From Paramoeba atlantica (Eukaryota > Protista > Discosea), in assembly GCA_977017575.1 (NCBI GenBank), contig CDRNVI010000185.1:123557-187556 (forward strand): a stretch of DNA of 64,000 bases. The letters run 5' to 3'. The position numbers were made by a program, and so were the translations under genes. The notes under the pieces are model-generated. The model ran no database searches and had not been told where the DNA came from. It saw nothing but the letters and a program-made list of their open reading frames with translations. Positions 1 through 24,123 of the stretch are shown in pieces. The first letter of the stretch is position 1. Each line of letters opens with the position of its first letter.

Positions 1-404
1 CCAGAGAAGGAACGCCAAGATCGTACAGGACTGGTACCGCCGCGGGGTGAGGGGGTAGGTTAGGGCGGGGGGAGGCTTTCGGTGGGCCTAGGGGGGGTAT
101 TCCCCCCAAAAATACAAAATAATTAATCAGCAATACGACTGAGTGAGAAAGATAAAAAAATGTTTTCGAAAAACAGTACCATGGTGCGGACAAAATTCCA
201 TGTCCGGACCAGTGTCCTGAAATTACTCCCCCAAAAAAGCATAGCCCCCCGTAACAGAGATTTGTCCATTTTAGTCCAAAACCCTTTCTATTACTGGGAT
301 AGTATACAGTAGTACTATTTCCAATTTGTGTAATACATCGTACGCTGCTTGTTGGTAACAGTACCCGTCAATATATTGTAGTGACATTCATGCGTTGTTT
401 TCAC

Positions 405-1008
405 ATGATTTCCAGATTTCTTCCACACTGTAAAGACACGCATATTCCCAAGTTCATTAACTTAACTTCACGTGCGAGCAAGGTGAGAGGAACGCATCTC
501 CCTCCGGAATATGAGCTTGAAAAGTTTCTCAGTGACGTACAAAATCCACATGAGTCATGGAGTACTGCCACACCTGCATGTGAGTGGGATGGAGTGAAGT
601 GTAACGACGAAGGGGAAGTTATTATCATTGCTTGGTATGGTCGAAAGCTGGTTGGTACAATACATTGGGGTTGCATTCCACGTTCTGTGACTAATGTAGA
701 GCTCAGCTCTAACCAGTTAAGTGGGAGTGTGTGTTTTGCATCCCTTTCTCGAGACATGGGTAGATTGTTCCTTCACGAGAATATGTTCACAGGTGAGCTA
801 CACTTTGAAGATCTACCTCCTCGCATGTATCTTCTGAATGTCTCGAAAAACCAGTTTACTGGTTTTGATTGATCTTTCATGCCTAGAAGAAATGAAAATT
901 TTGGCATTGCAGATAACGGGTAATCCGAATCTTGAGGGATCAATTCCAAAGCGCATGCTGCCTGATGTGTATTACTGGAGATTTCCTGTGTCCTGGATTC
1001 AGAACTAA
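405..1008 (+). pseudogene. LRR protein, paralog 1; one-base frameshift near 868 (pseudogene or sequencing error)
   Basis: ORF MISRFLPH...ACEWDGVKC...LSSNQLSG...LPPRMYLLNVSKNQFTG. Collinear with 3030-3632. Removing one base at ggttttg(a)ttgat restores DLSCLEE...ITGNPNLEGSIP...FPVSWIQN* ending at 1008. Confidence 0.8.
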
Positions 1009-1085
1009 ATTTATATGGACCTACAGAGGTGGACATCAAAGTAGGGGGGTGGGTCAAAATTTGCAAAACGTTTTGAAACGAATTA

Positions 1086-1672
1086 CCGTGAAAACATTAA
1101 TTAAGAATAACATAAATTAAGGTAACTTTTTTTTGGCACATAATTATTACCTTAATTTCTGGTACCTTAATTATTGGTACCTTAATTATTGTTCGGAACT
1201 CATATTTCCGATGTCGATATCTTTCGAAACTTGAAGAAAATTCAGTTGAAAGTACCTATAACACCTGTAATCAGGTGAGTTAGAATATTAGTCCATGCAG
1301 AATATAGTCCATACGTAGAATCATCATTCGGAATTAGAACATTAGATAACACACTTTTAAACTCGCGCACCTGTGTATTTAAGTTAGCAATGTTCAGCCT
1401 GGTTTAGCCCAAATACGTGTAAGCTGGTAATAGCATTCACATTGCCCTGGTTAGCTTGCGTTTTAAACATGCCTACCTTGTACGATTTTTGAATACACGC
1501 TGATAGATTCTAAGTTGAAAATAATCACCGCCTTTCACGAAGCGACTAGAATAGAAATTAATTATTGCAGCAGATTTTCGGAAAAATGAGTGGCACATAA
1601 TTATTACCTTAATTTCTGGCACCTTAATTTCTGGTATCTTAATTTTAATTACCTTAATAAGTATTTTGACGG
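1086..1672. mobile_element. possible non-autonomous TIR element (MITE-like)
   Basis: Imperfect terminal inverted repeats ccgtgaaaacattaattaag / cttaataagtattttgacgg. Internal repeat ggcacataattattaccttaatttctgg near 1135 and 1592. TA on the left, CA on the right. Confidence 0.35.
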
Positions 1673-1674
1673 CA

Positions 1675-2343
1675 CTGTACCCCCTATTTACTATTGAGTG
1701 CTCAACCCCCCCTATTTAGTGTTGAATTTTGGGTTCGGTGCGCATAAGCGCCGCTTCGCGGCGCTTTTTTTATTTACAAAAACGTTTTTTTCTTATCTTT
1801 GCTTGTTATTTGTGATTGTTTACCGATTTCTACTGATTTACTTTAATCATACAGGATGATACTTGCAATCATCAAAAAGCAAGACTATAAACGTTGGTCT
1901 CATTTTTGGTGGGCGGGGTCGTATTCATTCTTATTTTGTTTCTCCTTTATACTTTCCCCCTTTACAAGCTGTCCCCCCACAGGCCTTTATACAAAATCCC
2001 CCACAGCGTTCATAAAGCTGTATCCCCAACCGAGTGAAAAAATACTACAATCATGGCATACTGTTATTTATTGGCTTCCTTTCATAGGAGGATAAGTCAG
2101 GTGTGTGCCCTCTATGGTTGAGATTGCTCCTGTGTTGGCACAGACCCTTCGAGCACAGCGGACCTAGACTGAAACTAGGGGGACATATCTCTTCGGAGAC
2201 ACACGGTCTTGTGATAAAACAAAAAAGGTTTGGAAAAAAAATACGCTTTTTTTTGGGGGGGAGGAGATTTCTTACCCCCCCCTATTTAGTGTTTAATTTT
2301 GCCGAATTTCACTCAACACTAAATACATGTAGGAGGGGGACAG
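1675..2343. mobile_element. MITE-like element, Tc1/mariner-type ends
   Basis: Ends ctgtaccccct...agggggacag followed by TA. Internal repeat ccccctatttagtgtt near both ends. Shares the hairpin gcgccgcttcgcggcgc with the 4700-4876 element. Confidence 0.45.
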
Positions 2344-2663
2344 TAATTAAAATAGCGTTTGAAAATAATTAATTAAAAGTGGAGTTACGTGTCGTCCAAC
2401 CATGGATTTCCCGCGGGTATAGAGACTCTCATTTTCCTAAGAAGTTAAAACGGACAACCGCAACTTCAAAAGTAACAACACAATGTCTAAGATACATGTA
2501 TCCAGAATGACCCCCATTGTTTTCAACAAAAATCTTGATTCCCTTAGGCTTTTTAAAGCATTTACTCCTTTTAGTTCTCCTTTTAGTTCCTCAACCCCTG
2601 ATTATAAATATATAATTATATATTTATAATATAAATAAATAATAATACAAATAAATATATATA

Positions 2664-2849
2664 AACCCTGCTCCTGGTTAATGTGCCCACCCTGCACAAT
2701 AACTGGCTCTAGGCACAATAACTAAATATATGAAATCGCGGCGCCATATTTTGGAGGAGGGGGGGGGCACAATAATAGTGGTCGTTTTCACTTATTGTGC
2801 CCCCCCTGCACAATAAGTAGCTCTAGGCATAATAACCCGGAACAGGGTT
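2664..2849. mobile_element. MITE with about 25-bp TIRs and TA target
   Basis: Left aaccctgctcctggttaatgtgcc versus reverse complement of the right end aaccctgttccgggttattatgcc. Flanked by TA on both sides inside TA-rich DNA. Confidence 0.7.
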
Positions 2850-3029
2850 TATATATTTATTATAATTATATGTTTATATTGTGTCACGCAAATCTCCACG
2901 AATTTTACTGCACATGGTGTTAAGTTGTTAATTCATACAGTTCACCGGTCTATTTTCTCTTCGACACATGCGTATCTTCGAATCTAGATCTCTTTGTTTT
3001 TTCAGATTGATGTCCACTCATCCATTCAC

Positions 3030-3632
3030 ATGATTTCCAGATTTCTTCCACACTGCACTTGTAAAGATACGGGCATTTCCAAGTCTCCCACTTCACGTGC
3101 GAGTAAGGTGAGAGGAACATTTCTCCCTGTGGAATATGAACTCGCAAAGTTTATCAGTGATGTTGAAAATCCACATGAGTCGTGGAGTACTGCCACACCT
3201 GCATGTGAGTGGGATGGAGTGAAGTGTAACGATGTAGGCGAAGTTAACAGCATTGTTTGGAATGGTCGAACAATGTGTGGCACGTTACATTGGGATTGCA
3301 TTCCACGTTCCGTGACCAACTTGGAATTGAGCGCTAACCAGTTAAGTGGGGGTGTGTGTTTTGCGTCACTTCATCAAGATGTCGAACGAATGTTGCTTCA
3401 GAATAATAGATTCATTGGTGAGTTGCGTCTTGGAGACCTACCTCCTCGCATGCGTATTTTAAATGTCTCACAAAATCAATTTTCTGGTTTCGTTGATCTT
3501 TCATGCCTGCAACAAACCGGTATTACTGGATTTGACATAACGGGTAATCCGAATCTTGAGGGATCGATTCCGAGGGGGATTGTTCCAAAGGGGTGTTGGT
3601 GGGGTTATCCTTCTTCCTGGGTTCAAAAGTAA
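3030..3632 (+). CDS. LRR protein, paralog 2 (intact, about 200 aa)
   Basis: Cys cap (ACEWDGVKC) followed by LRR units LELSANQLSG, LLQNNRFIG, LNVSQNQFSG, ITGNPNLEG. Preceded by a polypyrimidine tract and AG at 3004-3005. Confidence 0.85.
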   Translation: MISRFLPHCTCKDTGISKSPTSRASKVRGTFLPVEYELAKFISDVENPHESWSTATPACEWDGVKCNDVGEVNSIVWNGRTMCGTLHWDCIPRSVTNLELSANQLSGGVCFASLHQDVERMLLQNNRFIGELRLGDLPPRMRILNVSQNQFSGFVDLSCLQQTGITGFDITGNPNLEGSIPRGIVPKGCWWGYPSSWVQK

Positions 3633-3889
3633 GAGGACACATTGACTGCGGTAGCAATATGTCCACCTATTGTAGAGTACCGTGGAAATGAAAATTAAGG
3701 AGATTCCTTAATTTTAGCAAAGTAAATGTTTTCCCAAAATTTACAGTAAAAAATGATGATAGATGATAGAGAAAGGATGATAGAAAAAGATAAAAGGCGC
3801 ACAGAGAGAGAAAACGTCTTGAAAGTTTCTGAGTCCTGAAAATGCAAATCTGGTCTATGATTTTGAGTTATGCGTCCGTCTGATTTTTG

Positions 3890-4603
3890 CTTATCTTTGC
3901 AGCATTGAAGAGATCTCGTTCCCCTAGCGAAGCGCTTTGCCGCCTTTTGTTCACAGAGACCCCGTCTGTGCGACTCGAAAGTGTGAAGAGATCTCGTTCC
4001 CCTAGCGAAGCGCTTTGCCGCCTTTTGTTCACAGAGACCCCCTCTGTGCGACTCGAAAGTTGACAAAAATAGGAAATTTTGGATTTTTAATCAGATTCAG
4101 AAAAAATGACTTCAACAAAAAAAAATGTTTGTCCTAGAAGAAAACCACAACGAATCAATATCCAGAAGGTCCTCCATTGTTTTGCAGTACGTTTCGAAGC
4201 CTATTGGGAACCGAATCAATGGAGTTTAACACTTTCTGTTTCTGTGCGATATTAGGGGGTATTTTTGCCTATTAGCTTTCCACCCTTCTACATATTCACC
4301 ACTTGTAGGGTTAGTCGGTCTTCTATTCGTGTTGTTGAGGTTAGAAAAATTCTATTAAGCAGCTATTGATGTTTCTACAGAAATATTGCTTGAGCATAAA
4401 GAAATTAGAAGACTATTTAAGCTTACACACATTCAAATAAACCACAAAAACATGAAAGTATGGAGAAAAATGGTTGTGTGCACAAAAAATTCCCCAAAAA
4501 AACTGTGATTTTTCGACCCAGGGGGCATCAGGGGGTCTATGAAAAAAGGGCGACAAAGCGCTTCGCTAGGGGAACGAGATCTCTTCAATGCTGCAAAGTT
4601 AAG
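3890..4603. repeat. 78-bp tandem duplication (3906-4060) plus an inverted copy (about 4543-4603)
   Basis: gaagagatctcgttcccctagcgaagcgctttg occurs twice in tandem and once as the reverse complement. Confidence 0.85.
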
Positions 4604-4699
4604 CGAAAACGGATAAAAATTAAAATTTCCCAGGAGGGGGCAAGATCAACAACCGCCCCTGTGCATACAGTATAAGGCCCTTAATATGCATATAATATA

Positions 4700-4876
4700 C
4701 TGTCGCCCCCCGTTTAAGCGCACCTCGTTTTCCGTGAAAAGTGCGCTTAAACGGGGGGTCTGAATTAGTACATAAAAAAAAATTTGGCGCCGCTTCGCGG
4801 CGCCGGTGACTCCACCTCAACTTTATGTGCGCTTAAACGGGGGGGTCTGACCGGGTGCGCTTAAGGGGGGGGGCAG
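4700..4876. mobile_element. MITE with TA target duplication
   Basis: TA|ctgtcgccccccgtttaagcgcacc ... ggtgcgcttaagggggggggcag|TA. Internal gtgcgcttaaacgggggg twice and a gcgccgcttcgcggcgc hairpin. Confidence 0.75.
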
Positions 4877-6420
4877 TACGTAGAAGGCCCACCGTGCTTT
4901 TTTATCCATCTTTGAATGTGCGCCGTAAGAAGGTTCTAACAGAGGCGATGGTGCATAGTAAGCTGGAACGCAGTCGAGCGATTATGGCATACCTGTAGAT
5001 TTACAACGTGGCCTGAAGATCATGCGCATTTCCACTATTGTTTTCTAGCCACCTGTTTAGCTTTGAATTTAGTTTCATGAAGACTTCCTTTAGCTGATGA
5101 GAACCAAGGGCGAATATGTACCAAGAGAGTTGCTCTGGGTGTCATGAATATGGAGAATAGTGTATGAATATGGAGAATAGTTGGCGCATATTTTCTCGCC
5201 ATGTATCTACGGTATTCTTCGCCTTTCCACGTACTATATTATATTATTATTAGGCTCTTCGCGATTAATTTCAAGAGCACTCTGGTTACTCCGTTCTACA
5301 CAATTTACATGTCACGATTTTGATCAAGATGGTTAAATTATTTATTAAACGCAGCAGTAGTCTACGTAGGTTGTTGCACGTGAAACAATGTGATATCTGA
5401 AGCTTCAGTACAAAGATTTCTACATTTTTAAAACTACTGGCTTGAAGTTCAAATACGTTAGACCACGACCTTGCCTATTCATTTTTTGAAGTCTAGATTT
5501 TTACCTTTTCTTGATCCTTTGTCTTACTGATAACTGCATACGAGATAAGACACTCCGAGAATATATGGATTAAATAGAAATGTATTTTGAATACTCCCTC
5601 AGTCCGAACTACTGGCCACTTGACTAAATGTATGATCTTAAATTGTATTATTGCGTTGGTTGTAAAAGTACCGCTCTACCCTCGATTATTGAAAAAAAGT
5701 GAACAAAAACAGTGAAAATATAAAGAGGAACACAGTAATATAATAGAAGAAAAAAATATAAAAGGGGGCTCCGGTGGTCCAAAACTGAAAAAAAAATTGA
5801 AAAAAATGGGGGGTCCAGGGGGGGGTCCAGGGGGGGGGGGTCATGGTCGAGCAAATTTTTTCGAAAAAATTAGTTTTCGAAAAAAAACCGCAGAAAGGGT
5901 AGCCGGGGTCTTGGCGCGCATTTTCCACCCCCCTACCCGGGGGTGACCCCCCTGCGTATCCGCAGGACGGGTCCGCCGAGTTCGAATTTCTTCGGAATTT
6001 TTTTTTTGAAAAAAATTTCAACTTGGCGAAAAAAATAGCAAAAAAAGTATTTTTCCAAAATCGTTTCCCCTATTGTATTTTGATAGTTTGGGACCTATAC
6101 TAGCTCTCTCCGCAGTTGTTTTCGCAAGCTATCCCTTCTTCGAACCGTGGTGCGCCCCTCAAAATGACCCATTTTTGACTAAAAAAGGTGAGAAAGTATT
6201 TTTCGGATCTAAAGGGGCATTTTTGTGTCGAAAGAATGGTATGGTTGGAGTCACATTCTCTACCCAATACGTTCGGTAGGCTTCCATTCATGCCTACGAG
6301 TGATTTCCCACGCGCAGATGTCGGATTTAGTGCTCTGAGAGCAAAAATACGCGAAAATCACCACATTTGTACCCGAAATTCGGCTATTTTTGGCTATAAT
6401 CTTTCCGTTTTCTAGGCTAA

Positions 6421-6541
6421 ATTTTCTTTTTTGGGCTCTTCGTTAAACGCGGCGGTAGTTTTCAACGCGAAGCGCGCAGCATAAGTGACTTCTAAGTTGA
6501 AAACAACCACCGCGTTTAACGAAGAGCCTAAAAAAGAAAAT
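6421..6541. mobile_element. fold-back mini-element (46-bp inverted repeat, 3 mismatches)
   Basis: attttcttttttgggctcttcgttaaacgcggcggtagttttcaac versus reverse complement of gttgaaaacaaccaccgcgtttaacgaagagcctaaaaaagaaaat. A degenerate right arm also lies at about 1508-1555. Confidence 0.7.
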
Positions 6542-6649
6542 CTTACTGGGAGATACAATGTATTGCTTGTGATTCAATGTACTTTTGTGTGATCCAACTA
6601 TCTGTTATTGCAGTGCTGATATTTTTTCTTACTTGTTCTTCATCAGAAT

Positions 6650-7620
6650 ATGATGCTCGCTCTTTTTCCTCTTCGACAAATTCGTGGTCTCAGGGATACC
6701 ATATTACTGATATGTCTTTTTTCGGCGCTACTTTTTCTTAGTGCAATTTCTTCCAAGCGATGCGGAATAAATTGCCGAGATTTCGAGGTTGAAACAGATC
6801 AGAAACAAGGTCTAAATGCGTATTTTGGAGAATTTTTAGATGCTAGCGCGATCGAAAAGCGCCCGCATGAATTTGATGAATTGTTTAGCAAAACTTTGCA
6901 TTGGGAAGGGTGTGCGCTGCGTGAAGTTAATTGGAATTTTGAAAAGGTGCCGCGTTCATTTCCGACCGTCAAGCATGAAATTTCTTTTGATTGGAGTGTC
7001 TTTCCCGAAACTTTACGAAAAGTGGAAATTTCATTCGATGACTGGGGAACTTGCCTGTGTATATATGAGAGAACTACAAGAACTCATTCTTTGTCATAAT
7101 GATATCAGTTGAATGTGACGGATAAAGCTTTGCCTTTCTTATCCACTGGCCTCCGTGTGTTAGATTTGTCTCACAATCTTATCAGCGGAAACCTTCAAGC
7201 TACGTTTGCCGCACTCCCTCCGTCACTTCGAATCCTAGATTTAAGTTCTAACGAAATTACGGGTAAGCTTCATATAAGCGACGTGCCAAATCATTTGGAA
7301 CTATTGCGTCTTAAGAATAATAAAGGCTTAAGAATAAAGGCTTGCATGAAAATCCGTGGATTTCAGTTGATACTACTCTACTGAGAGAACATTTTCAGGA
7401 TTCAAACAAGAAAAGGAAACTGAATTCTTCTCAGAGTGCCCCATTTAAGGACTCGGTTTCACAAATCGCAATGTCGCTGAGGGAGCTGGATTTATCTTCC
7501 AACCAATTGAAAGGAAGCGTGGAACTTAACTTGCCACGGAACTTAACTTATCTAAACTTGGGTAAGAATAATTTAGTTGTGGAAGCGATACGTACGTCCA
7601 ACTTAATTTTCTTGCTTTAA
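6650..7620 (+). pseudogene. multi-frameshifted LRR protein with hydrophobic N-terminus
   Basis: Successive ORFs carry LQELILCHNDIS, LRVLDLSHNLISG, LRILDLSSNEITG, LRELDLSSNQLKG and LTYLNLGKNNL in different frames. Confidence 0.75.
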
Positions 7621-8178
7621 GACTAAAACTGGAAAGGAACTCGACGTTTTCGTGCAAAAGATTTTTGGAAACAGTTTGACAAATAGAATACAAATAGATA
7701 GAATTCGTGCACAAAACACTTATGGGCAGCATTTTTCCAGCCCCTTGTGTGACTCTAATTTTTTCAGTGTGTCTTGAGTAGCATTAGGAAAAAACATGTA
7801 TTTTCTTGCCGTTTTACTTGCCTCAGTAATTGCCTCTGTGAGCCTTAGAACGTGTTGATTCATTTCATGTCCTCATTTCATGTTACGGATATTCAATCAG
7901 AGGCTGTCTCTTTCCTCATATTTTAGCGATCACACGGAAATAAAATTACATGTAAAATTCAGCATTTTATGTTCATTTTATAAATCGGAAACTCATTCTT
8001 AATCCATCATGGGAGGAAATTCGGCGCATGTACAGTTCTTTCGAACACGACAAGTAATCTGACTTTCAGGAAGCGTTGGCATTTATTCGGATCTATGAAC
8101 CGCATCATTTAGATCCGACTCGCTTCGCAAATTGGTGCCGGAAAAGCTGTTCTGGTCCTCGCGTTCAACGATTAGAAA

Positions 8179-10965
8179 ATGAAGGACTCAGATGATGCGG
8201 TTGATGTGGTGAAGCCGATGGATATCGTCCGCGGAAGTCTGAACAAGAAAGACATGACAAAAGAGTACAATTCTTCCCTTCTTGCCTCTATGGCGAAAGA
8301 AGTCCAAAACGGCTTGAAAAGTACCGAATGCGAGACATTTGCAGCCACTCTTTTAAAGAAGAAAAGGCTCGCCTTGATCTGGAAATTGATGTACGAACTT
8401 TTGAAGGAGATGCAAAAAAATGTACCCTCGATAGTATACGCACAAGCACTTGGAAATGCCCGTTGTTTTTTTGTTGACATTGAGGTAGCGCTTTCTGAAT
8501 TCGCAAGGTCGGAAGTCCCAGAATTGGGTAGCGTTTCACGCGATCTTCGTTATCAATGCGTAATGAATTTGGGAGACTTATGGCGATATGAAGCTCAGCT
8601 TCCGAAACAATTAACTGATTTGAATGCCACCGAACGAACGGAAGTAAATACTGAATCTCGCAAAGAGGATAAAAAATATCAAGTTAACGATCATGCGAGC
8701 TATGCCTTTGATCACAAAACAATGTCACATGCGATTGAATATTATCAAAGTGCAACCCATTTGAATCCCACCTGGGGCCATGCGTACAATCAACTCTCGG
8801 TGTGCTATCTTCAAAAGAAACGCTATGTGGACGCGTTACTTTACTCTCTTCTCTCCATGTCGGCGGCTAGGCCTTTTATTCTTTTTGGATCTGAAAATGC
8901 GCAGCGAAATATGAATGCTATTCGAAAAGCGACAGGCTGGTCCGTTAGAGACGAAGGCAGCGAGAACGATAAAGTTGTGACCGAGGAACAAAAAATAAAG
9001 AAAATGGAATCAAGTATTTGCCATCTTTTTGCTACGATCTGTGTAAAAGAAGAAGTAGACCAGGTACTCATGGATCGAGCGACAACACTTTGGAAGCGTA
9101 CCATGGATGAGTCATTTGATTCCCAGGCAGAAGATCAGCCCTTCACAATTTCCCCGAGTCTCGCGGCTTGTCTTCTGTGTATTCAGAGTCTTCGTAGTGA
9201 GAAATCCGAAGTTCAATCCACCCCTTCAAAAAACACAAAAGATTTTACGATGGATAAACTTTTATCAATCTTTTTACGCGGGATTCTAGACGCCCTAAGT
9301 AACGCCCTTTGCCTTTTTCCCAAAGATACTCAAAAAAGTTTAGATGGCGACCCTACCAGCCCGAGTCACATAAAAAATATATCGACCACCCCCAACCTCT
9401 GCCGATCCTTATTTCAAGCGTTTCTGCTTTTGGCTCCACTTCTTATCGGAGAAACGAAGACAAAGCGCACCTCTGGTATCTTTACCCCAACATTTCGTAC
9501 CTTAGCCCAACACCATTTTAACGTTTGCTGTGAAAAAAGATATGATTTATGGCATTCCCGTATTTGTAGTGGAAAGCCTGTGACGGGTTTTACCTTTAAA
9601 GAGGCTCAGAGTACGTTAACCCGAAGTTCCTTTACCTCGTTTAAAACCTTTTGTGCGCAACAAACACGGAAGGACATTCTGCTTCACGAATTACCTCGGT
9701 TGTTTTATCTTCCGTTCGAGCTTGGCTTTGCGCTGGATGCGAATGAAATTGGATGCAAAAACAAATCGATTCAAGGCATGGAAGATCGTTTGCGTGTCTA
9801 TTCGCTGAAATCGCCCCATTTTCAAGGTCTAAAGGAAGTCGATCATGTGTTTCAAATGTACTGGCGATTCCTATGGTGCTATCGCGAAGAATTGGGATTA
9901 CATTATCGGAAAAGGTGGGATGAAAATGAAATGAGTGTGCGTCAAAAGGAACTCCGCATCAGTAAAATGCAAGACGAGCCCTATGAAGTCAGGAAACAAA
10001 TAAGCGCGTCGTCACGAGAAGAGGTGAAAATCGTTCAAAAGAAAAAATCTGTGGTTACGAATATTTCCAAGTCGAGATCAAAATCAACATTTGCACAGAA
10101 AATACCTGAAGCAATTTCATCTCCAACATTGTTGGAAACGCCTGAGATTTCACAAACAACCGAAGCCCTTTCTCAGGATTGGCTCAGCAATGCATTGGCA
10201 AGTCCTAAAGCCTCTGAAATGTTAAGCGATGGAGTCCATAACACACGGAGTGAATTCCAGCTGACACAGCTCGTTCGATCATTTAGTCGCGTCTTCGAGG
10301 AAGAAGACAAGGGAGAAGAAGAATTTGAGAAAGAAAAATTGGGAACGAAATCTGAAAATTCGGAAAAAGAAACGGAAATAGAGGAGAGAGAAGAATCTGG
10401 TGCGGATTCAGATTCGTTCTCTGCGGAAATTGAAAAGGACTTGGACGATATTGTCGGTGAAGTGATGTTTCCAGCCGAATGTAATTTTATGGAAGTCATA
10501 AAAAAGGATTTTGAGCCTCTCAAAAGGACGACGGAGAATGAAGTCCAGACAAGTTCTCCATTAAATTCTGACTTCTTTGATTCAGGTGGTCAAAAAGAGA
10601 CAACAAATGAATGGGTGCAGCCACATGAGTCTAACGCTACATGTAAATGGGATTTTCATGAACCGTCACATTCTGGGATATTAAAAACGAAACAAGAAAG
10701 CTCTGTAATCTTAATGACCGATGTTGGGAAAACAAAAAAAGAAGGGAGGAACGCGGAGAATTCTATTTCTACTCAAATAGGTACTGACAGTGATATGAAA
10801 ATGGAAAGGGGCTGGAAACCGACGACGCTTGACTCGCTCCGTCAATGTACCTCTGTCAAAGACGCGAACAGTGGGGAGTACTCTATGGATGGCGTTGGCA
10901 GTTCGCCTGGCGTTCAATTCTCAATGCTTGCCCCTTTGCTTCATGTCGAGAAAAAAAAGTTATAG
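8179..10965 (+). CDS. EST1/SMG5-SMG6-SMG7 family TPR protein (SMG7-like, no PIN domain seen), 928 aa
   Basis: Family motifs LGDLWRY ... YYQSATHLNPTWGHAYNQLSV ... LSMSAARPF ... AQRN. Acidic low-complexity C-terminus. Single intronless ORF. Confidence 0.8.
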   Translation: MKDSDDAVDVVKPMDIVRGSLNKKDMTKEYNSSLLASMAKEVQNGLKSTECETFAATLLKKKRLALIWKLMYELLKEMQKNVPSIVYAQALGNARCFFVDIEVALSEFARSEVPELGSVSRDLRYQCVMNLGDLWRYEAQLPKQLTDLNATERTEVNTESRKEDKKYQVNDHASYAFDHKTMSHAIEYYQSATHLNPTWGHAYNQLSVCYLQKKRYVDALLYSLLSMSAARPFILFGSENAQRNMNAIRKATGWSVRDEGSENDKVVTEEQKIKKMESSICHLFATICVKEEVDQVLMDRATTLWKRTMDESFDSQAEDQPFTISPSLAACLLCIQSLRSEKSEVQSTPSKNTKDFTMDKLLSIFLRGILDALSNALCLFPKDTQKSLDGDPTSPSHIKNISTTPNLCRSLFQAFLLLAPLLIGETKTKRTSGIFTPTFRTLAQHHFNVCCEKRYDLWHSRICSGKPVTGFTFKEAQSTLTRSSFTSFKTFCAQQTRKDILLHELPRLFYLPFELGFALDANEIGCKNKSIQGMEDRLRVYSLKSPHFQGLKEVDHVFQMYWRFLWCYREELGLHYRKRWDENEMSVRQKELRISKMQDEPYEVRKQISASSREEVKIVQKKKSVVTNISKSRSKSTFAQKIPEAISSPTLLETPEISQTTEALSQDWLSNALASPKASEMLSDGVHNTRSEFQLTQLVRSFSRVFEEEDKGEEEFEKEKLGTKSENSEKETEIEEREESGADSDSFSAEIEKDLDDIVGEVMFPAECNFMEVIKKDFEPLKRTTENEVQTSSPLNSDFFDSGGQKETTNEWVQPHESNATCKWDFHEPSHSGILKTKQESSVILMTDVGKTKKEGRNAENSISTQIGTDSDMKMERGWKPTTLDSLRQCTSVKDANSGEYSMDGVGSSPGVQFSMLAPLLHVEKKKL

Positions 10966-10977
10966 ATGTCCAAAACG

Positions 10978-11382
10978 TTAGTTGGCCGTATCACTCGTGC
11001 TTGGCGTAAGCAGCTTCTTTTCAAGCTCAAAAAACTTTGAAGAAAGCAGCACTGATCGATAGTAGCCTAACCTAGCTCTCAAATAAGGAAGAATCAATAC
11101 GTTGTTATGAAAAACTACCGTAATAAGCCGCGGAATTGATTGAGTTGTATTTTTGTTTGACATTTTAGTAATTATTTGAAAGAAGTCTAATGATACGTTA
11201 TCAAGTTCAGATAGCCTAGCCCTTAAAATGCGTTGTACGCTTTTGTTTGAGATTTTTTTTATTTGTGTTGTAACACTTTCATATGCTATGTTCTTCATAT
11301 TTATATATATCTTTTGGAAAATTTTTCCCATGCGTTTGTAGACGGGAGATTTTCCCAGCAATTTGTGAAGTAGTTTTTCCAA
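10978..11382 (-). CDS. hypothetical protein (134 aa), unsupported by homology
   Basis: Open frame of ordinary complexity between two long + strand genes. No recognisable motif. Confidence 0.2.
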   Translation of the reverse strand: MEKLLHKLLGKSPVYKRMGKIFQKIYINMKNIAYESVTTQIKKISNKSVQRILRARLSELDNVSLDFFQIITKMSNKNTTQSIPRLITVVFHNNVLILPYLRARLGYYRSVLLSSKFFELEKKLLTPSTSDTAN

Positions 11383-11670
11383 CGTGATACCAGTATATTC
11401 GTGTATGACTTTGCCTCAATTGCACCTTCCTTAGTACATTATATAGTAGTACAAGTACGTTGGCTTTTGGCAAACGTTATAGACTACAATACGTGAAAAC
11501 TAACAATTGGTTACGAAAACCGAACTTCCCTTTGTGTATGGTCGATCCACTTTTTTGCCATTGAAAAGCCTAGAAACGCTTCGTTTACTCTTACCTTTGT
11601 TATTTCTCGTTGTCTCATTGTTTTCTGTGCACTCCTTGACACGGCAACTCTGCAGTGCTCTGCTGTAAAC

Positions 11671-14052
11671 ATGCGGAAGACAATATCTCGAGAGAATACT
11701 CCTATGCGCCGCACTCGTATTCCTGTCCTCTCTCATCTTGCGATATGCTTTGCCGTCTTTTCGATTCATTCGATCGGAGGTTCATCCTGCGAAAAGATTT
11801 CTAAGTACGAACTATCACCCGTTTCGTGGGTTCCTCCTTGGGCCGTTACAACCAGCGATCCGATTCGACGTAGACCGAAATTTCCTTCTGACAACCTTGA
11901 GGACGACAAGAGCTTTCAAACCCGGAGCGTGTCTTCCTCAGGCGCCTCAGGATACTCCAAAGCACGTAGCCCTCCTGCGGGACGCGAAAGCGCACAATCT
12001 GCTTCGTCCATACGAGCCGGGGCTCGACGAGCCGCTGCGGCTGAACGATCCCTTACCAATTCCCCTACTGAATCGGCTCTTGCGAAAGCCAAAGCGCTGC
12101 GACAAGAAATTCACAGCAGTCCCTCACGACAAACATCCCTAAATTCCAATCCAAGCCCAAAGACTGTGACAGCAAATCCGATTTCCAGCGCCCCCCTTGA
12201 GGGAAAAGGAAGTGGAACCAATTCACCAAATGATCCCCGTTCTCGCGCTTCGGGATCTTCCGCAAATGTACACGTTTCGCCTACCTTATTGGCGCAAGCC
12301 ACCCAAGCACCTCGAATGAATGCCCGCAGTCTTGGCTCGACCCCTACTCCATTGGCATTACCCCAAGACAGTCCTCACCCCTCTGGCCTCCCCTCGAGTC
12401 TAGCTACACAATTAGTGCAGCTACTCCGGCGGGACGTTAGTGGGTTAAACGCGTTTTTACGAACCTTTACGGTTGAACATTACGAAAAGGAAAACAGCGA
12501 GCCCAATCTGTCAGCGCCACCCCCGAAAAAAACAAAGCCTTTGCATCCCGAGGTCTCACGAAGTTATATTCACCCCCTAGCGTCATGGGAGGATCCGGTG
12601 CTGCGATGGGTACGGGAGGCGTTGGATTTAGAGGAGATGGGGGTGCAGAACGCAGCGGAAAAAGCACACTTGATTAACCCGACAGGCTCCGCTGGCGCGA
12701 CACTGTCCTCCCCTAATGATCCACGAATGGTATTGTTACACAGCGGGCAAAATGCGTTTGGCCGGCCGAGTGCGGCACATTCGGCACCCCATCCGATGCA
12801 TGGGGCTTCGTCGTTTCCCTCTTTTGGACAGTTTTCTCCCAAGAACAATACGCTCTCCTTTGCCTCTATGCCACAAGAACCATTGCCCCCGACTCATCGG
12901 CTGGAGATTCCGATTTTCGCTCCCAATCACGCCAAACGAGAAGAGACGCCTGTGGGACGATGGCTGGTTCGTGCGCAAATCCGGGCGCGAACGAGTCTCC
13001 CCCCAAGCACTCCCCATAAGAATCCGAATTCCATCAAATCCGGGCGCTCGCGAAGTGTCGAACGACGAGCGCATCCCCCAAAAGGAGAACGCCAACATGG
13101 GAGTTTCTCCTCATCGCGAACTACGCCTACAGGAAGTCGGCGACATCCTTCCGAGAGTGGAAGGCCTTCAAAAACCACAGGATCGACCAGTTTCTATGGA
13201 CCTTCGGGGGCAGGAAGTAGCCCCGTCCCGGGCAAAGAGGAGTACATTCTCACCCATGCCCAGCTCATTCCACAGGAACAGATTGCCTCATTGTACTCCC
13301 TCACCGTTGCGCGCATCAACCCCAACGAAGCCGCGCTAACGTCCCGTTTCGCCACACGTCGCGGGTGGACACTTCAGCGTTCGCCGTTGAATACACCAAG
13401 TGAGGATATTACCCATCACTGGGAGAAGGGGGAGGAAGCCGGGATGCCACAACATCACGCCCATAGCGGTACTGCGCAGCACACCACCGACAACGGCCAT
13501 TCCCCCACGACCTACCGTCGACGAAGCTCCAGCGAGTACGCCATGGGAAAAAACCCCTCCGACGCCCCTACCGGTCTAGTCGTGCTCTGGGTGCATCTCT
13601 CCTATGCCCTCGACCTCAGCGGGTCCTACCGACGTGCCATCTATGAACAACAACAGCGACGACGAGGCCATCAACCCCCCACCACCGGAACCACAAAAGA
13701 GATGATGAATGCCAGCGCCACCCTCTCCGCCCCCGGTACCCCCCCATGGCCTGCCTACCTCTCCCAACCTCATCCCCAATACGACCCCCCGCCCTCGGAA
13801 ACTCCCTCCCCCATCTGTACCCTCACGACCATGTCCGCCTTCCAAGCGGACGGGCCGGGTTCGATTCCCGGGTGGCGCATTTTTTTTTTTTCAAAATCCC
13901 TTCAAGGTCACCTGGCTCACAGCCACCCCTTCTCCTTTGCAAGAGCTCTTGATATCTGGTATCAGTTCCCTTTCGGTTTTTCTTGCTTCAAATGGAGATT
14001 CAAAAATTGTATCCAGATCATTTTTTTGGAAAAAGCTTGGAAAAACTCATAA
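11671..14052 (+). CDS. hypothetical Ser/Pro-rich protein (793 aa); the 3' end probably reads through the junction
   Basis: Long open frame with a hydrophobic N-terminal stretch. The last about 75 codons run through the tRNA-Gly fragment, its T-run and AT-rich DNA. Confidence 0.6.
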   Translation: MRKTISRENTPMRRTRIPVLSHLAICFAVFSIHSIGGSSCEKISKYELSPVSWVPPWAVTTSDPIRRRPKFPSDNLEDDKSFQTRSVSSSGASGYSKARSPPAGRESAQSASSIRAGARRAAAAERSLTNSPTESALAKAKALRQEIHSSPSRQTSLNSNPSPKTVTANPISSAPLEGKGSGTNSPNDPRSRASGSSANVHVSPTLLAQATQAPRMNARSLGSTPTPLALPQDSPHPSGLPSSLATQLVQLLRRDVSGLNAFLRTFTVEHYEKENSEPNLSAPPPKKTKPLHPEVSRSYIHPLASWEDPVLRWVREALDLEEMGVQNAAEKAHLINPTGSAGATLSSPNDPRMVLLHSGQNAFGRPSAAHSAPHPMHGASSFPSFGQFSPKNNTLSFASMPQEPLPPTHRLEIPIFAPNHAKREETPVGRWLVRAQIRARTSLPPSTPHKNPNSIKSGRSRSVERRAHPPKGERQHGSFSSSRTTPTGSRRHPSESGRPSKTTGSTSFYGPSGAGSSPVPGKEEYILTHAQLIPQEQIASLYSLTVARINPNEAALTSRFATRRGWTLQRSPLNTPSEDITHHWEKGEEAGMPQHHAHSGTAQHTTDNGHSPTTYRRRSSSEYAMGKNPSDAPTGLVVLWVHLSYALDLSGSYRRAIYEQQQRRRGHQPPTTGTTKEMMNASATLSAPGTPPWPAYLSQPHPQYDPPPSETPSPICTLTTMSAFQADGPGSIPGWRIFFFSKSLQGHLAHSHPFSFARALDIWYQFPFGFSCFKWRFKNCIQIIFLEKAWKNS
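13830..13879 (+). pseudogene. 5'-truncated tRNA-Gly(TCC)
   Basis: Anticodon arm TCCGC-CTTCCAA-GCGGA, T arm CCGGG-TTCGATT-CCCGG, 3' acceptor strand GTGGCGC-A and a T-run. No D arm or 5' acceptor strand upstream. Confidence 0.8.
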
Positions 14053-14652
14053 AAATTTGTAACACCCTTTTTAATCAGTGTCTCTTTTTTATTGATATTT
14101 TTTTGGGAGAAAAACACAGCCATTCCAGATACCACCCCAAATCAGGGTATATTCTTTTTTCTTTTTTTTTTTTCCCTTTTTTTTTTTTCCCCTTTTTTTT
14201 TTTTTCCCCTTTTTTTCTTTTTCCTTTCCTTTTTCCTTTCCTTTTTCCTTTCCTTTTCCCTTTCCCTTTCCCTTTCCCTTTCCCTTTCCCTTTCCCTTCC
14301 CTTTCCCTTTCCCTTCCCTTTCCCTTTTCTTTCCTTTCTTTTTCTCTAATCTTTCTTTTCTTCTTTCTTTTTCCCCCTCTCTTATTTCTTTTTTTTTTCC
14401 TTCTTCTTTGTTGCAATTCTTTTTTTTCTTTCTATCAGTCTTTTGAGATTCTCAATTGATAAAGTTTTGTCCAATCACAACCAGTATTTGTCAATTATTC
14501 AAGACAAGTTGTATTCTCTTGCTGTGCCTTGATCTTCTCTTTCAAATTGGATTTGATTTGTTTTTGTTTTTTATGTTTTCTTAATTTTTTAAAGTTGATA
14601 AAGTTTTTTTTGATTTTTTTTGATTTATCTTTTCTTTCAGCTCTTCTTTCAA

Positions 14653-14691
14653 TTGTGAACTGATCAAGTCCCAGTGGCCACTAAAAAAAAA
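14653..14691 (+). repeat. A-tailed motif copy (ttgtgaactgatcaagtcccagtggccact-A9)
   Basis: Similar to 53911-53972 and 56829-56883. Confidence 0.75.
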
Positions 14692-14710
14692 TCTTTTTTT
14701 TTAAACAAGT

Positions 14711-14773
14711 GGTTCTATAGCTGGCAGAGCACCACCCTAGTAAGGTGGAGAATCTGAAAGTCAAACTTGCTCC
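14711..14773 (+). pseudogene. degenerate tRNA-Thr(AGT)
   Basis: GGTTCTATAGCT..GGCAGAGCA-CCACC-CTAGTAA-GGTGG-AG aligns to tRNA-Thr(CGT) at 56903. The T arm is destroyed. Confidence 0.65.
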
Positions 14774-15261
14774 TCTTTATACTTGCAATTTGGAAAAGGG
14801 ACTTTGAAGTGCTCTGGTGGGAGAACACAAAAACTTTTGGTTGGGGAATCAAACAATATGAAGATGACACTGCTGTTGATAGGAAGGGGCCAACTTTTTT
14901 GTCAAACTTCCAAAGTTCCAAACTTTTCTGTTGTAGAGCATTGGATGGGTTGGTTGTGCTCAGGGATGACATTTTGTAATGGTTTCCCCTTGCTAAGTCA
15001 GTATCTTGTTGCTGGATCTTGAAAAATTACAGCTCCATTCCTCTACTAAAGATTAGGGCTCAAAAGGTGGTTTACAGTCCTGTCATCATCAGGCAAAACC
15101 ACTTCAGGAATTGTTCAAGCAATTTGAGAATGTTGAAGAGCATTTTATTTCAAGAGCCTGTGTTTAAAAGCACATAGGTTATCATAGAAACCAGTGATGA
15201 TATGATGGCTTTTCTGAGTTTGATGACTTCACAAAAAAACAGAGTTTGAACACGGACATTG

Positions 15262-15334
15262 GCTTCCGTGGCTCAGTCGGTAGAGCGTCAGTCTCATAAT
15301 CTGAAGGTCGTGAGTTCGATCCTCACCGGGAGCA
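15262..15334 (+). tRNA. tRNA-Met(CAT), elongator type
   Basis: Full cloverleaf GCTTCCG/CGGGAGC, anticodon arm TCAGT-CTCATAA-TCTGA, GTTCGATCC, downstream T-run. Confidence 0.95.
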
Positions 15335-16376
15335 CTTTTTTTTTTGTCTTTTGATTTTTTTTTTGAATCAGGGTGGAGTTTATTGACTTGTTTTCGATTT
15401 TTGACATTGAGAAAAGTTATGAAATTCATCAGGTTCAGTGAAAAGTACAAGTCAATGAAAACACAGCAACACAATCTTCATCCATTTTCTTTTTTCAATT
15501 TTTACAGGTTTGAAATCATGTAATGGTGGAACTCAGAGCAGAGAAGATATGATCTCACCCAGATACCCCATCTTCAACAAAAACAATTGGCAGCCCAGGA
15601 TGCAACACTCAAGGAACACATCAGACTACAATTGAAGGTTTAAAGACTCAAATTTCAAAAACTGATGAGCCAAAGCAGAATATCACTCTGTTTGACAACA
15701 AGACAAGGGAGCTCTACAAACCAGTTTCTTGGCTGATTCATGATGATGTGACACCAGCAGGAATGATCAAAGAACTTGATGAATAACAGGTGGAAATTTG
15801 TGTGAGGTTGCTTTCATGCATGAGGATATTCAAGAGCAGTTGAAAACCTGGCAAAAATCCCTGGGGAAAAAATGGTGCCCAAAATCCCAACAGACATCTG
15901 GCAGTACATACAGAAGGATGGTGAACTGAAGGCTGGGAGCAGTTGCGACTGAGGAGCATCTTCAGGCAATGTCCAACAACATCCTACATATCATGAGAGC
16001 CATCCCAGGTGCCAAGGAAGATAAGACTCAATCCGACCAATTGCTTAAAACATTGATTGCGCTCATAACAATGTATTCCTTGAGGATGTGTGTGTTGTAA
16101 TTACAAAATGTTGCTCACCAGAAACTCAACCTTTCACCTTTGGATTTTAAATCTCCACCAACTGTTGTCAGGAGAGAGGAGATAGCAAGAGCTCAATTGA
16201 GGAAGAAGTCTACAAGAGGAGTCAGAGAAGAGGATTGTGTGAAAGTGATGGGGCAGTCTGTTGCAACCACTTTGAAGCAAAGCCACCATTCAAGAAAAGA
16301 AGAAGGTTTGCGCACCAAACTGCTACCACCTTTGTTGATTGTGGAAATTCCAAAGGGAGACAGTCCCCTTTTTTTA

Positions 16377-17441
16377 GGGGTCTAAAATAAATGACTTGTA
16401 CTCTCTGAAGTGGAGAGTCAGAAAAGTCACTTTTTTGGTGATTGACTTGGGCAATCAAAAATAACTGGAGAGGGACAATAAGAATTAACTAATTTTTTAT
16501 GACAAGCCAGAGCAAAGTTGATCAAACAATTATGTTGGTCTTTATCTTCATAGAAGGGGCAAGAGAGAGCAGCAAAAGTCTGTTTACACCAACCATACGG
16601 TGACTCAACTTTTCCTCTTACAAATGCAATTGCTTCATTTTTCTCTTGATCCTCAGCACTCAATGAATGGGGAACTCTCTTTCCACGGATTATTCGAGGC
16701 CTTCCAGCGTTTGACTTGTTTGTGACCAACACCAACTTATCGAAAAATTTTGTTGCTGCTCGAAAGTGGTTGTCTGCAATGATGTGTGGTCCCAGAAAAG
16801 AGGTCATCAAGTCGATTCGCATAAAAAATAGTGATATCTCCATCATAATCTTTTGGTGAATGGATCCCACTAACCCATTCAGCCCCACCTTTTGCATTGT
16901 GAAGTGTCACCCACCACCAACCAGGAGCTTTAAGTTTGTGTGAGTACCATTTTGCCCTCCACTTCTTGCGAACTGTCTGTTGGGCCCTTTAATTTTAAAA
17001 TCAGATGAATCCATCCATAAACAGTCAAATTGGCATGGTGGTGGTCATTCAGTTCTTTGGGCCATTTCCACAAATGAAAGAAAGGGTGCTTGGGACCAAG
17101 ATTGTTTTTGCCCACTTTAGCAACTCGAAGCGAACAACTTGAACTGTTGTGTTGGATTGCTTTTTGGCCCATTGGGAGCCAATCGTGCACCTTTTTTCGG
17201 AGTTTGCCCATCCCAACCGCAAATAGATCCTTGTACATTACAAGATGATACACAGACACAGCAAAACCAGAAGGTCTCTGTTCACTCCAAAGCTTTGGTT
17301 TTTGAGATTCCAAAAAATTTAGAATCTCCTTCAAAGTCTCTTCTCCCAGCTTCTCTTTCACAGCAAATATGATATCTTTCTTTCTCAACCCTTCAACCCC
17401 CACCATTGGTGAAAGAGTACAACTCATTTTATTTAGCTCTC
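16377..17441 (-). mobile_element. compact IS5/ISL2EU-Harbinger-type DNA transposon (DDE_Tnp_4-like transposase, frameshifted)
   Basis: Reconstructed motifs LWMDSSDFKIKGP, WYSHKLK, IIADNHF, LSAEDQEKNEAIAFVRGKVESPYGWCKQTF. Imperfect TIRs ggggtctaaaataaatgacttgtactct / gagagctaaataaaatgagttgtactct with TTA and TAA flanks. Confidence 0.75.
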
Positions 17442-20330: not shown

Positions 20331-21212
20331 ATGATGGACCTCTATTTTGGGTCCGGATGGTTTTTTTTTTGTTGGCTCACGAAAGAGGGAGGGGAAGAGG
20401 AGAGGGAGGAGAGGGAGGAAGCGAAAAGGTTCCAGAGAGAGAGAGTGTGTGTGTTCAGTTGTGAAGAAAAAACAATATTGGCCCAAAGGAATTCCAGGGG
20501 AAGAGATTGTTGCACACCTCAAGGAGAAGGAACCTGGTTATGTGTGAAAGTGAAGAAAGGATCTCTGAGAGGTTATAAATTCTATGTGGAGGCTTTCCAA
20601 GATGTTCATCACTCTTCTATAATGATTAATACCTGGGGAACTTCTTTTCCCACTGGTTGCCCACGAAATCGCAAGCTTGAAGGCCAAAGACTCTCCCTGT
20701 GATATACTCAGCCTCTTGACTTTTACTATCAAACCAGGCATTGTGTGGATGATCACAACCAACTGAGGCAAGGTTCTCTCTCCTTGGAGAGTTCCTGGAA
20801 GACCAAAAAATGGGTCCACAGGCAGTTTGCTTTCATTCTTGTAGTTGTGGAAGTCAATGCCTTCCTCATATTTCAGCACTTTTTCCCTCAAGCCAAAGAG
20901 CTCTCCTTTGCAGAATTTCGTTTTGAGGTTGCCCAAGGTCTACTCTCTCAGAATCATCCCTTGGATGAAGGCTATAACCTGCGAATACCACTCCCAACTC
21001 ATGTAGAACATCATCTGATGATCAAGCCCAACTTTGCTGGAGTTTGGTGAAATGGTAATTGGACTGAAGCCAGACAAGAGTACCAGAAGAGTAGATGCAA
21101 TGGGACAAATTGTACAAAGAAAGTTCGAACCTATTGCTCCTGTGATCAAACACTCATTTTTTGTTCAGGTTGCTTTGCTGACCATATGAGCAGGCACATG
21201 ACTGAGGACTAA
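20331..21212 (+). mobile_element. piggyBac-like transposase relic (3' half)
   Basis: VKKKQYWPKGIPGEEI, YYQTRHCVDDHNQLRQGSLSLESSWKTKKWVHRQFAFILVVVEVNAF and a C-terminal Cys cluster RCNGTNCTKKVRTYCSC...FCSGCFADH. Contains stops and frameshifts. Confidence 0.8.
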
Positions 21213-23366: not shown

Positions 23367-23548
23367 TGAAGATTACTGTGATCAGTGTTTTCTTCATAAG
23401 CTTACATCAGGTTGCATTGACCCAAACAATGAAGAAGAAGAAGAAGAAGAACTTGAATCAGAGTTTCTTCAAACAATCAGTGTCAAGTCAAGATCACTGA
23501 GAATACATCCAGGAATGAGAGTCTCTGGTGAAAGAGTTTCTGTTTGGC

Positions 23549-23805: not shown

Positions 23806-24123
23806 TCTTATGTAAAGCATTAAACCAACAGTTTTCACTCCAAAACCTGATGGAGGTTGAAACTTGAACAAGCCCATTTCAGGAATTTTAAGAGGATGGA
23901 ACTTTCCTTTGATAATTTCAAGAAAAAATATCACTCTAGTCTCCCCTCAACCAATTATATGATGTTCATTTCCAAAAAAATATGGTTTCTTTCTGAATAA
24001 ACATTCAACTAGAAGTCAATTTGTAGAACCACACCACTATACACTCATTCAGACAGACCTGACAGATCTGTTAACTTGGAGCAAAGATGGTCTTTATTTT
24101 TTTGTTAAAAGCAACATGTAATC

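What the first reader, a model, noticed from the sequence alone, without database searches (positions are those of the whole stretch)
1..13879. Kinetoplastid-style 13.8-kb block fused to amoeba-style rDNA/TE DNA at a broken tRNA-Gly
Seen: the left block is CpG-rich, intronless and free of long T/C tracts, and all its credible genes are on the + strand. Right of about 13.8 kb the DNA is AT-rich, CpG-poor and low-complexity, with spliced TE genes. The switch lies at or shortly before a tRNA-Gly whose 5' half is missing (style already drifts from about 13.4 kb). Known: Paramoeba/Neoparamoeba carry the obligate kinetoplastid endosymbiont Perkinsela, and kinetoplastids have intron-poor directional gene clusters. 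Inference: the 18S looks Dactylopodida-like and the left block Perkinsela-like. That would make this either a large endosymbiont-to-host nuclear insertion at a tRNA gene or an assembly chimera.
Basis: partly seen in the sequence, partly recalled or inferred. Interest (0 to 1): 0.8.

Follow-up and report, generated by a model that had tools for sequence, protein, structure and literature searches.

The report
Symbiont-host join is an assembly chimera
The sharp switch from trypanosome-like DNA to amoeba DNA at a broken glycine tRNA gene is really in the sequence. Public read sets and a second assembly all carry each side on into its own genome, so the join is almost certainly an assembly error and not a transfer of symbiont DNA into the host nucleus.

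Summary
CpG observed/expected is 1.02 over 1-13830 and 0.10 over 13880-30000. The switch is a blunt point at 13830|13831. Directly to its right lie the last 49 nt (13831-13879) of a 71-nt tRNA-Gly(UCC) gene.

- In Logan contigs of four public runs, no listed contig and no reported joint crosses 13830|13831.
- Left-side contigs align up to exactly 13830 and then run on for 160-262 nt with other letters. One of them is identical to the window over 2,031 nt.
- Right-side contigs start exactly at 13831 and carry the intact tRNA 5' part in front of it.
- An independent ENA assembly (ERZ24900291, contig ctg3560l, 27.5 kb) matches window 11036-13830 at 99.5%. It then continues with the same "other letters" into at least 10 kb more CpG-normal DNA whose larger gene calls all lie on the + strand.
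- The right flank is a high-copy host repeat (summed depth in the hundreds to thousands, against 40 on the left).

A rare or strain-private real insertion cannot be strictly excluded without the raw long reads (about 0.07). Interest is low. The scan has flagged other cross-organism "chimera" junctions in this assembly (s1-392947, s1-403743), unchecked by me.

The parts
1..13830 (+). Kinetoplastid-style (Perkinsela-like) block: CpG o/e 1.02, no long homopurine or homopyrimidine tracts, credible genes all on +
   Evidence: Matches ENA ERZ24900291 ctg3533l at 99.89% over 1-8202 and ctg3560l at 99.5% over 11036-13830.
381..872 (+). Small LRR-family gene copy with an LRRNT_2 cap. In the window it is cut short by a 1-nt difference at 868 relative to the 200-aa ENA version.
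2994..3632 (+). Small LRR-family gene (LRRNT_2 + LRR). The 200-aa product is identical to ENA protein P0001; the closest other relative is an MMETSP transcript at 65% identity.
6650..7620 (+). LRR coding region broken over three frames (6650-7099, 7109-7384, 7342-7620), probably a decayed LRR gene. The split is also seen in the ENA gene calls.
8179..10965 (+). 928-aa ORF with an Est1/SMG5-7-type DNA/RNA-binding (TPR-like) domain
   Evidence: Pfam PF10373, E 3.1e-14; atlas feature hits to EST1 clusters at 0.95; no hit in the word search
11671..13830 (+). Pro/Ser-rich ORF inside a C-skewed GC island (about 56% GC), cut by the false join. In the native context it runs 123 nt further to its own stop.
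13830..13831 (.). Breakpoint: a blunt join with no shared letters, no filler and no adapter
   Evidence: every left contig ends its match at 13830 and every right contig starts at 13831; the ENA contig match ends at 13830
13831..13879 (+). The 3' 49 nt of a 71-nt host tRNA-Gly(UCC) gene: end of the D arm, anticodon arm, T arm and 3' acceptor strand. The first 22 nt are missing.
   Evidence: Prefixing the loose-end letters seen in runs X2-X4 restores a full cloverleaf tRNA-Gly(tcc).
13880..14150 (+). T-run terminator and the flank of the tRNA gene: CpG-poor (1 CpG) and a high-copy repeat in the runs (summed contig depth about 1,000-4,400 in X1 and X2, against 40 for the left block in X1)
14150..14450 (+). 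Pyrimidine-only low-complexity tract (196-nt C/T run), typical of the right block
13880..64000 (.). Amoeba-style host DNA: CpG-depleted repeats, tRNA genes with T-run terminators, polyubiquitin (37084-38103, -), and one rDNA unit (18S 46591-48696, 5.8S 48901-49056, 28S 49363-53403)

Best explanation
The junction at 13830|13831 is an assembly artefact. A contig of the kinetoplastid endosymbiont's nuclear genome (Perkinsela-like) was joined to a contig of the amoeba host's nuclear genome. The join falls in the middle of a symbiont ORF on one side and 22 nt inside a high-copy host tRNA-Gly(UCC) gene on the other. Shown: each side has its own different continuation at exactly this point in independent data, and nothing listed spans the join. 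Inferred: the cause was a chimeric long read or a false graph link. The symbiont path is hard to extend here, because a C/T microsatellite and a 72-81% GC island follow within 100-400 nt, and the short-read contigs die 160-262 nt past the breakpoint. The host partner is a very abundant repeat, so it is over-represented among chimeric molecules.
For: (1): in Logan contigs of four runs (X1-X4, one study), no listed contig crosses 13830|13831 and the joints table is empty. (2): X1 record 1 (7,479 nt, depth 40, 0 differences from the window over 11800-13830) and X3 record 18 (1,321 nt, depth 171) stop matching at exactly 13830. They run on for 160 and 262 nt unlike the window; the X3 letters are TATCCTCGAAGGGTAAGCACAACCCACGCC. 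(3): ENA assembly ERZ24900291 contig ctg3560l (27,539 nt) matches window 11036-13830 at 99.5% and then carries exactly those letters. The 10.1 kb I could read beyond that has CpG o/e about 0.6-1.1, and its larger gene calls all lie on the + strand (EDRF1_N and PQ-loop among them). (4): contigs on the right begin at exactly 13831. In X2-X4 they have GATAAGATGCGCTGCTAGTCTAGTGGCAGG before it, and in X1 the shorter GTCTAGTGGCAGG. Joined to 13831-13879, the longer string folds as a complete tRNA-Gly(tcc). (5): summed contig depth rises from 40 on the left to 600-4,400 on the right in X1. X3 covers the left block fully, but on the right only the tRNA gene itself (a contig matching 13831-13886 in another context) and nothing of 13887-14150. 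(6): CpG o/e is 1.02 against 0.10 with no gradient, and the left block shows no decay relative to the native symbiont contig of the same strain.
Against: All read evidence comes from de Bruijn contigs of one study, and such contigs drop rare variants. A junction present at low frequency, or only in the long-read sample, would be missed. I could not see the raw long reads behind the window's assembly. The letters of the 160-nt run-on in X1, the window's own strain, were not printed, so its identity with the ENA continuation is inferred. The ENA contig belongs to the other variant (it shares all 7 X3 variants), so it shows the native context in a sister strain, not in the very same one. A blunt join without adapter or filler is also what non-homologous end joining would give.
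Confidence: 0.88

Rival explanations
1. A real, very recent integration of at least 45 kb of Perkinsela nuclear DNA into the host nuclear genome. It would be joined by end-joining inside a tRNA-Gly gene near the rDNA, and present only in the sequenced line or in a minority of cells.
For: The join is clean and blunt, with no adapter or N. An assembler accepted it. Earlier notes report kinetoplastid-style DNA for more than 31 kb before the window, and L001 confirms 7 kb of it. Another note (s1-396148, unchecked) reports tRNA-Gly repeats next to 'foreign fragments' behind a 28S elsewhere in this assembly.
Against: No junction-bearing contig appears in any of four runs, including the one identical to the window. 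That same-strain contig passes straight through 13830 without breaking, so no well-supported branch exists there. The left block differs at 0 of 2,031 nt from the native contig and shows no CpG decay, although host repeats are stripped of CpG. PMC5601477 found only 8 candidate transferred genes among 3,846 host trees and called the role of endosymbiotic gene transfer minimal.
Confidence: 0.07
2. Ordinary host euchromatin: the left block is amoeba DNA of a different isochore, with no second genome involved.
For: Overall GC of 1-11700 (40.6%) is close to that of the right block (35-40%).
Against: CpG o/e jumps tenfold at a single base. Run X3 holds the left block at depth 150-171 but not the adjoining right flank. 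The left block continues elsewhere in another assembly. The gene style on the left (long intronless ORFs on one strand) differs from the host, which PMC5601477 describes as intron-rich.
Confidence: 0.01
3. A retroelement-mediated join: a 5'-truncated tRNA-Gly-headed SINE or retroposon copy inserted into, or template-switched onto, symbiont sequence.
For: Earlier notes mention tRNA-Gly-headed SINE-like elements in this assembly (s1-370597, s1-396370). The tRNA piece is 5'-truncated, as retrocopies often are, and the flank is high-copy.
Against: Symbiont sequence does not resume to the right; 50 kb of host DNA with rDNA follows. There is no target-site duplication or poly(A). The T-run after the tRNA is a Pol III terminator, like those at the other host tRNA genes. 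The flank 13887-14150 is absent from X3, which holds the symbiont at high depth, so it is not a symbiont repeat.
Confidence: 0.02

Closest known systems
Chimeric contigs in mixed host-symbiont (holobiont) assemblies
   Same: Two genomes with different composition, depth and gene style meet at one blunt point. Each side has its own continuation in independent data. The partner is a high-copy repeat.
   Different: Nothing of substance. The only unusual thing is how clean the join looks: there is no adapter, no N and no shared repeat.
Endosymbiotic gene transfer or NUMT/NUPT-like insertion of endosymbiont DNA into the host nucleus (in the Paramoeba-Perkinsela pair: 8 candidate genes, PMC5601477)
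   Same: Symbiont-type DNA lies next to host-type DNA on one sequence record.
   Different: No spanning evidence. The block is at least 20 kb (window plus L001), more than 45 kb by earlier notes. It is identical to the native copy, undecayed, and cuts a symbiont ORF. Known candidates in this pair are single genes found by phylogeny.
tRNA-gene-targeted mobile elements (Dictyostelium TRE, yeast Ty3)
   Same: A tRNA gene sits at the boundary.
   Different: Here the gene body is cut 22 nt in, with no duplication and no element end.

Membership tests
Assembly chimera (false join of two genomes) | Each side continues with different sequence at the breakpoint in independent data | tested here: met
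   Left: X1 and X3 contigs and ENA ctg3560l run on past 13830 with other letters. Right: contigs of X1-X4 carry the tRNA 5' part before 13831.
Assembly chimera (false join of two genomes) | No independent read or contig spans the join | tested here: met
   no listed bridging record and an empty joints table in four runs. These are contigs only, from one study, and 79 shorter records were not listed.
Assembly chimera (false join of two genomes) | Step in depth and composition at the join | tested here: met
   Summed contig depth is 40 against 600-4,400 in X1 (contig depth is a crude measure). CpG o/e is 1.02 against 0.10.
Assembly chimera (false join of two genomes) | Raw long reads of the source assembly: none, or a single chimeric read, across the join | not testable with these tools
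   All four runs laid were served as Logan contigs; no raw reads were on hand.
Endosymbiont-to-host nuclear DNA insertion (EGT, NUMT-like) | The junction is present in independent reads of the host genome | tested here: not met
   absent from the contigs of all four runs. The same-strain contig passes through 13830 unbroken.
Endosymbiont-to-host nuclear DNA insertion (EGT, NUMT-like) | Host DNA on both flanks of the insert | not testable with these tools
   The left end lies outside the window. L001 shows 7 kb more of the same style, and earlier notes say more than 31 kb.
Endosymbiont-to-host nuclear DNA insertion (EGT, NUMT-like) | The inserted copy diverges from the symbiont copy or takes on the host mutation pattern (CpG loss) | tested here: not met
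   0 differences over 2,031 nt from the native X1 contig; CpG o/e 1.02. This is also compatible with a very recent event.
Perkinsela-type (prokinetoplastid endosymbiont) nuclear genome | Intron-free genes in one-strand clusters | tested here: met
   Long uninterrupted + strand ORFs in the window, L001 and L002. The trait is described in PMC5601477.
Perkinsela-type (prokinetoplastid endosymbiont) nuclear genome | Spliced-leader RNA gene fragments or SL trans-splicing | tested here: inconclusive
Earlier notes report SL-derived units just left of the window; I did not check them.
Perkinsela-type (prokinetoplastid endosymbiont) nuclear genome | Proteins group with Perkinsela or kinetoplastid orthologues | tested here: inconclusive
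   The LRR family hits only ENA contigs and one unnamed MMETSP transcript. The 928-aa ORF has no hit. No tree was built.
Paramoeba/Neoparamoeba (Dactylopodida) host rDNA | 18S signature | tested here: inconclusive
   There is an exact 31-nt match to the N. perurans TaqMan probe, and the forward primer matches with a 4-nt insertion and one substitution at the same position. The N. perurans-specific reverse primer is absent (PMC6380893). The 18S is 2,106 nt and the LSU is unfragmented. No 18S database search was possible.
tRNA-targeted integration (TRE or Ty3-like, or integrase-type) | Target-site duplication, element termini, intact or reconstituted tRNA | tested here: not met
   The tRNA lacks its first 22 nt and the join is blunt with no duplication. 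There is no other copy of the tRNA piece in the window.

The most novel reading that the evidence does not exclude
The join is real but rare or private to the sequenced line. A fragment of Perkinsela chromosome more than 45 kb long was end-joined into the amoeba's nuclear genome inside a tRNA-Gly gene of a repeat-rich region that also holds an rDNA unit, a fresh bulk transfer of eukaryotic endosymbiont DNA caught before any decay.
Probability: 0.06. Interest if true: 0.75.

Novelty: not a real feature. Interest (0 to 1): 0.08.

Why it matters
If real, this would be the first bulk transfer of nuclear DNA from a eukaryotic, non-photosynthetic endosymbiont to its host. The one genome study of this pair found gene transfer to be minimal (PMC5601477). 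As it stands, the value is practical. This contig should be split at 13830|13831, and any claim of host-symbiont gene transfer, synteny or "foreign fragments next to tRNA-Gly or rDNA repeats" in this assembly should first be checked against reads. The breakpoint also shows where the symbiont assembly is fragile: the extreme GC islands.

Tried and rejected
- The word search with the 928-aa ORF found nothing, and exact look-ups of three window ORFs found nothing. They gave no taxonomic anchor.
I replaced them with primers read from PMC6380893.
- A kinetoplastid SL 3' motif from memory gave no match in the window, L001 or L002. This says little, since the Perkinsela SL was not on hand and PMC3165438 is not held.
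- The Rfam low-threshold scan of 1-15500 gave only chance miRNA-type hits on a long hairpin.
- Searching the window for the native left continuation and for the tRNA 5' part found neither. The window therefore holds no second copy that could explain the join as a repeat-mediated collapse.
- Self-BLAST of 13700-15300 found only low-complexity matches.
- The search of earlier findings by sequence was blank.
- I kept read laying to 11800-14150, so that the 196-nt pyrimidine tract was not sent. Depth further right was therefore not examined.
Full report
**1. Observation**

The window splits into two compositional worlds.
- Per-kilobase CpG observed/expected is 0.68-1.31 from 1 to 14000. It falls to 0.00-0.35 from 14001 to about 37000, with several kilobases containing no CpG at all.
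- Measured to the base, 1-13830 has CpG o/e 1.02 (651 CpG). The stretch 13880-14150 has 0.12, and 13880-30000 has 0.10.
- The longest homopurine or homopyrimidine run is 18 nt on the left and 196-218 nt on the right.
- Plain GC content is not very different (40.6% for 1-11700 against about 35% on the right). The exception is a GC island at 11.7-13.83 kb (56% GC, C-skewed).

The left block carries long uninterrupted + strand ORFs:
- two members of a small LRR family with an LRRNT_2 cap (381-872, 2994-3632);
- an LRR region broken over three frames (6650-7620);
- a 928-aa ORF with an Est1/SMG-type domain (PF10373, E 3e-14; atlas feature hits to EST1 clusters);
- a Pro/Ser-rich ORF from 11671.

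The right block holds the following:
- tRNA genes with T-run terminators;
- a polyubiquitin gene;
- an unfragmented rDNA unit: 18S 46591-48696, 5.8S 48901-49056, 28S 49363-53403.

The tRNA piece is 13831-13879, followed by a run of 12 T.

**2. What the two sides are**

An earlier look-up shows that the same assembly contains both spliced-leader, kinetoplastid-like pieces and amoeba pieces. It also reports LRR and SL-derived features for more than 31 kb before this window. These are unchecked notes.

My own tests gave the following.
- The 212-aa LRR ORF finds a 100% identical ENA protein and paralogues at 49-63% identity on other ENA contigs.
- The gene style fits the published description of Perkinsela: intron-free, polycistronic, littered with SL fragments. 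The Paramoeba host is intron-rich (PMC5601477).
- The 18S contains an exact 31-nt match to the N. perurans TaqMan probe.
- The N. perurans forward primer also matches the 18S, with a 4-nt insertion and one substitution, at the same position. The N. perurans-specific reverse primer site is absent (primers from PMC6380893).

This is consistent with a Paramoeba/Neoparamoeba species other than N. perurans, but it is not a proper 18S identification.

**3. The junction**

I laid Logan contigs of the four public runs that hold the stretch on 11800-14150. All are one organism label and one study.

Left side:
- X1 record 1 is 7,479 nt at depth 40, with 0 differences from the window. Its match covers 11800-13830, and the record goes on for 160 nt that do not fit the window.
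- X3 record 18 is 1,321 nt at depth 171. Its match also ends at 13830 and goes on for 262 nt, beginning TATCCTCGAAGGGTAAGCACAACCCACGCC.

Right side:
- Contigs of all four runs begin their match at exactly 13831.
- In X2-X4 they have GATAAGATGCGCTGCTAGTCTAGTGGCAGG in front of it; in X1, the shorter GTCTAGTGGCAGG.
- Prefixing the longer string to 13831-13890 gives a complete cloverleaf tRNA-Gly(tcc). The window therefore holds the last 49 nt of a 71-nt gene.

No listed record bridges the point, and the joints table is empty. Summed contig depth in X1 rises from 40 to 600-4,400 right of the join, carried by many short contigs. That marks the tRNA gene and its flank as a high-copy repeat. X3 covers the left block fully, but to the right of the join it holds only the tRNA gene, in a different context, and nothing of 13887-14150.

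**4. Independent assembly**

The last word search, with the ORF up to the breakpoint, found one protein, P0012 (545 aa, 99% identical).
- Its contig, ENA ERZ24900291 ctg3560l (27,539 nt), aligns at positions 1-2794 to window 11036-13830 at 99.5%. The alignment stops at exactly 13830.
- The next letters are the same TATCCTCGAAGGG... seen in X3. The ORF ends 123 nt later.
- A C/T microsatellite follows, and then a 72-81% GC island whose skew flips from -0.62 to +0.64.
- After that come at least 9 kb of DNA with CpG o/e about 0.6-1.1. Its larger gene calls all lie on the + strand and include EDRF1_N and PQ-loop proteins.
- The ENA contig shares all seven variants listed for X3. It therefore represents a sister variant, while the window equals X1.
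- A second ENA contig (ctg3533l) matches window 1-8202 at 99.89% and extends the same style 7 kb to the left of the window.

**5. Reading**

Both sides have native continuations that differ from the window at exactly one point. Nothing listed spans that point, and the left copy is identical to the native symbiont contig of the same strain. This is the signature of a false join.

The mechanism is inferred. The symbiont path is hard to extend just here: the short-read contigs die 160-262 nt further on, at the microsatellite that precedes the extreme-GC island. The partner is one of the most abundant sequences in the sample, so a chimeric long read or a false graph edge is plausible.

**6. Limits**

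- The evidence comes from de Bruijn contigs of one study, which can drop a rare branch.
- The X1 run-on letters were not printed.
- Raw long reads were not available.
- A real insertion at ordinary host depth would have put a supported branch at 13830 and broken the X1 contig there, which did not happen.
- A low-frequency or line-private event stays possible; I put it at 6-7%.
- PMC5601477 found only 8 candidate transferred genes among 3,846 host trees and called the role of endosymbiotic gene transfer minimal. That sets a low prior for a 45-kb insert and would make a true one notable.

**7. Verdict**

The insertion reading is not supported, and the chimera reading is supported at about 0.88. 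This is not a biological feature, and interest is low.

Noticed in passing
L002:2800-4200 (native continuation of window 13830): Directly past the breakpoint, the symbiont genome has a C/T microsatellite. A roughly 800-nt island of 72-81% GC follows, whose GC skew flips from -0.62 to +0.64. The window holds only its C-rich run-up (11.8-13.83 kb). This is the same kind of 'mirror-skew island' other notes of this scan describe.
   Followed up: partly
window 6409-6552: A near-perfect 144-nt hairpin (about 50-bp stem) lies in an intergenic part of the left block. It drew sub-threshold Rfam plant-miRNA hits, which are surely chance. L001:4703-4819 holds a 90% similar copy upstream of the window.
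   Followed up: no
window 868: An extra A relative to the ENA contig shifts the frame of the first small LRR gene, giving a 163-aa ORF here against a 200-aa call in ERZ24900291. This is either a strain difference or a consensus error in one assembly.
   Followed up: partly
window 3884-4063 and 4530-4609: Short repeat units of about 75-80 nt occur in direct and inverted orientation; ORFs over them read ...KAAKRFARGTRSLQCCK.... L001 shows matching units at the corresponding positions. They may be the SL-derived or retroposon debris mentioned in other notes.
   Followed up: no
window 24001-30000: There is not a single CpG in 6 kb (o/e 0.00) while GpC stays at 0.5-1.05. This is far stronger depletion than in the rDNA (0.92) or the polyubiquitin region (0.75), and fits the methylation-linked repeat erosion flagged in s1-405782.
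   Followed up: no
window 62812-62897: ARAGORN calls a tRNA with a four-letter anticodon (tagc). Rfam scores it 57.6 bits as a tRNA of 85 nt. It is probably a tRNA with a long variable arm or a small intron.
   Followed up: no
window 37084-38103 (-): A polyubiquitin gene (four ubiquitin repeats, PF00240 E 4e-129) lies between long purine/pyrimidine tracts in the host block.
   Followed up: no
runs X1-X4 on window 11800-13830: Two symbiont variants about 0.4-0.5% apart exist within one study. X1 equals the window, while X3, partly X4 and the ENA assembly share the other set of SNPs.
   Followed up: partly
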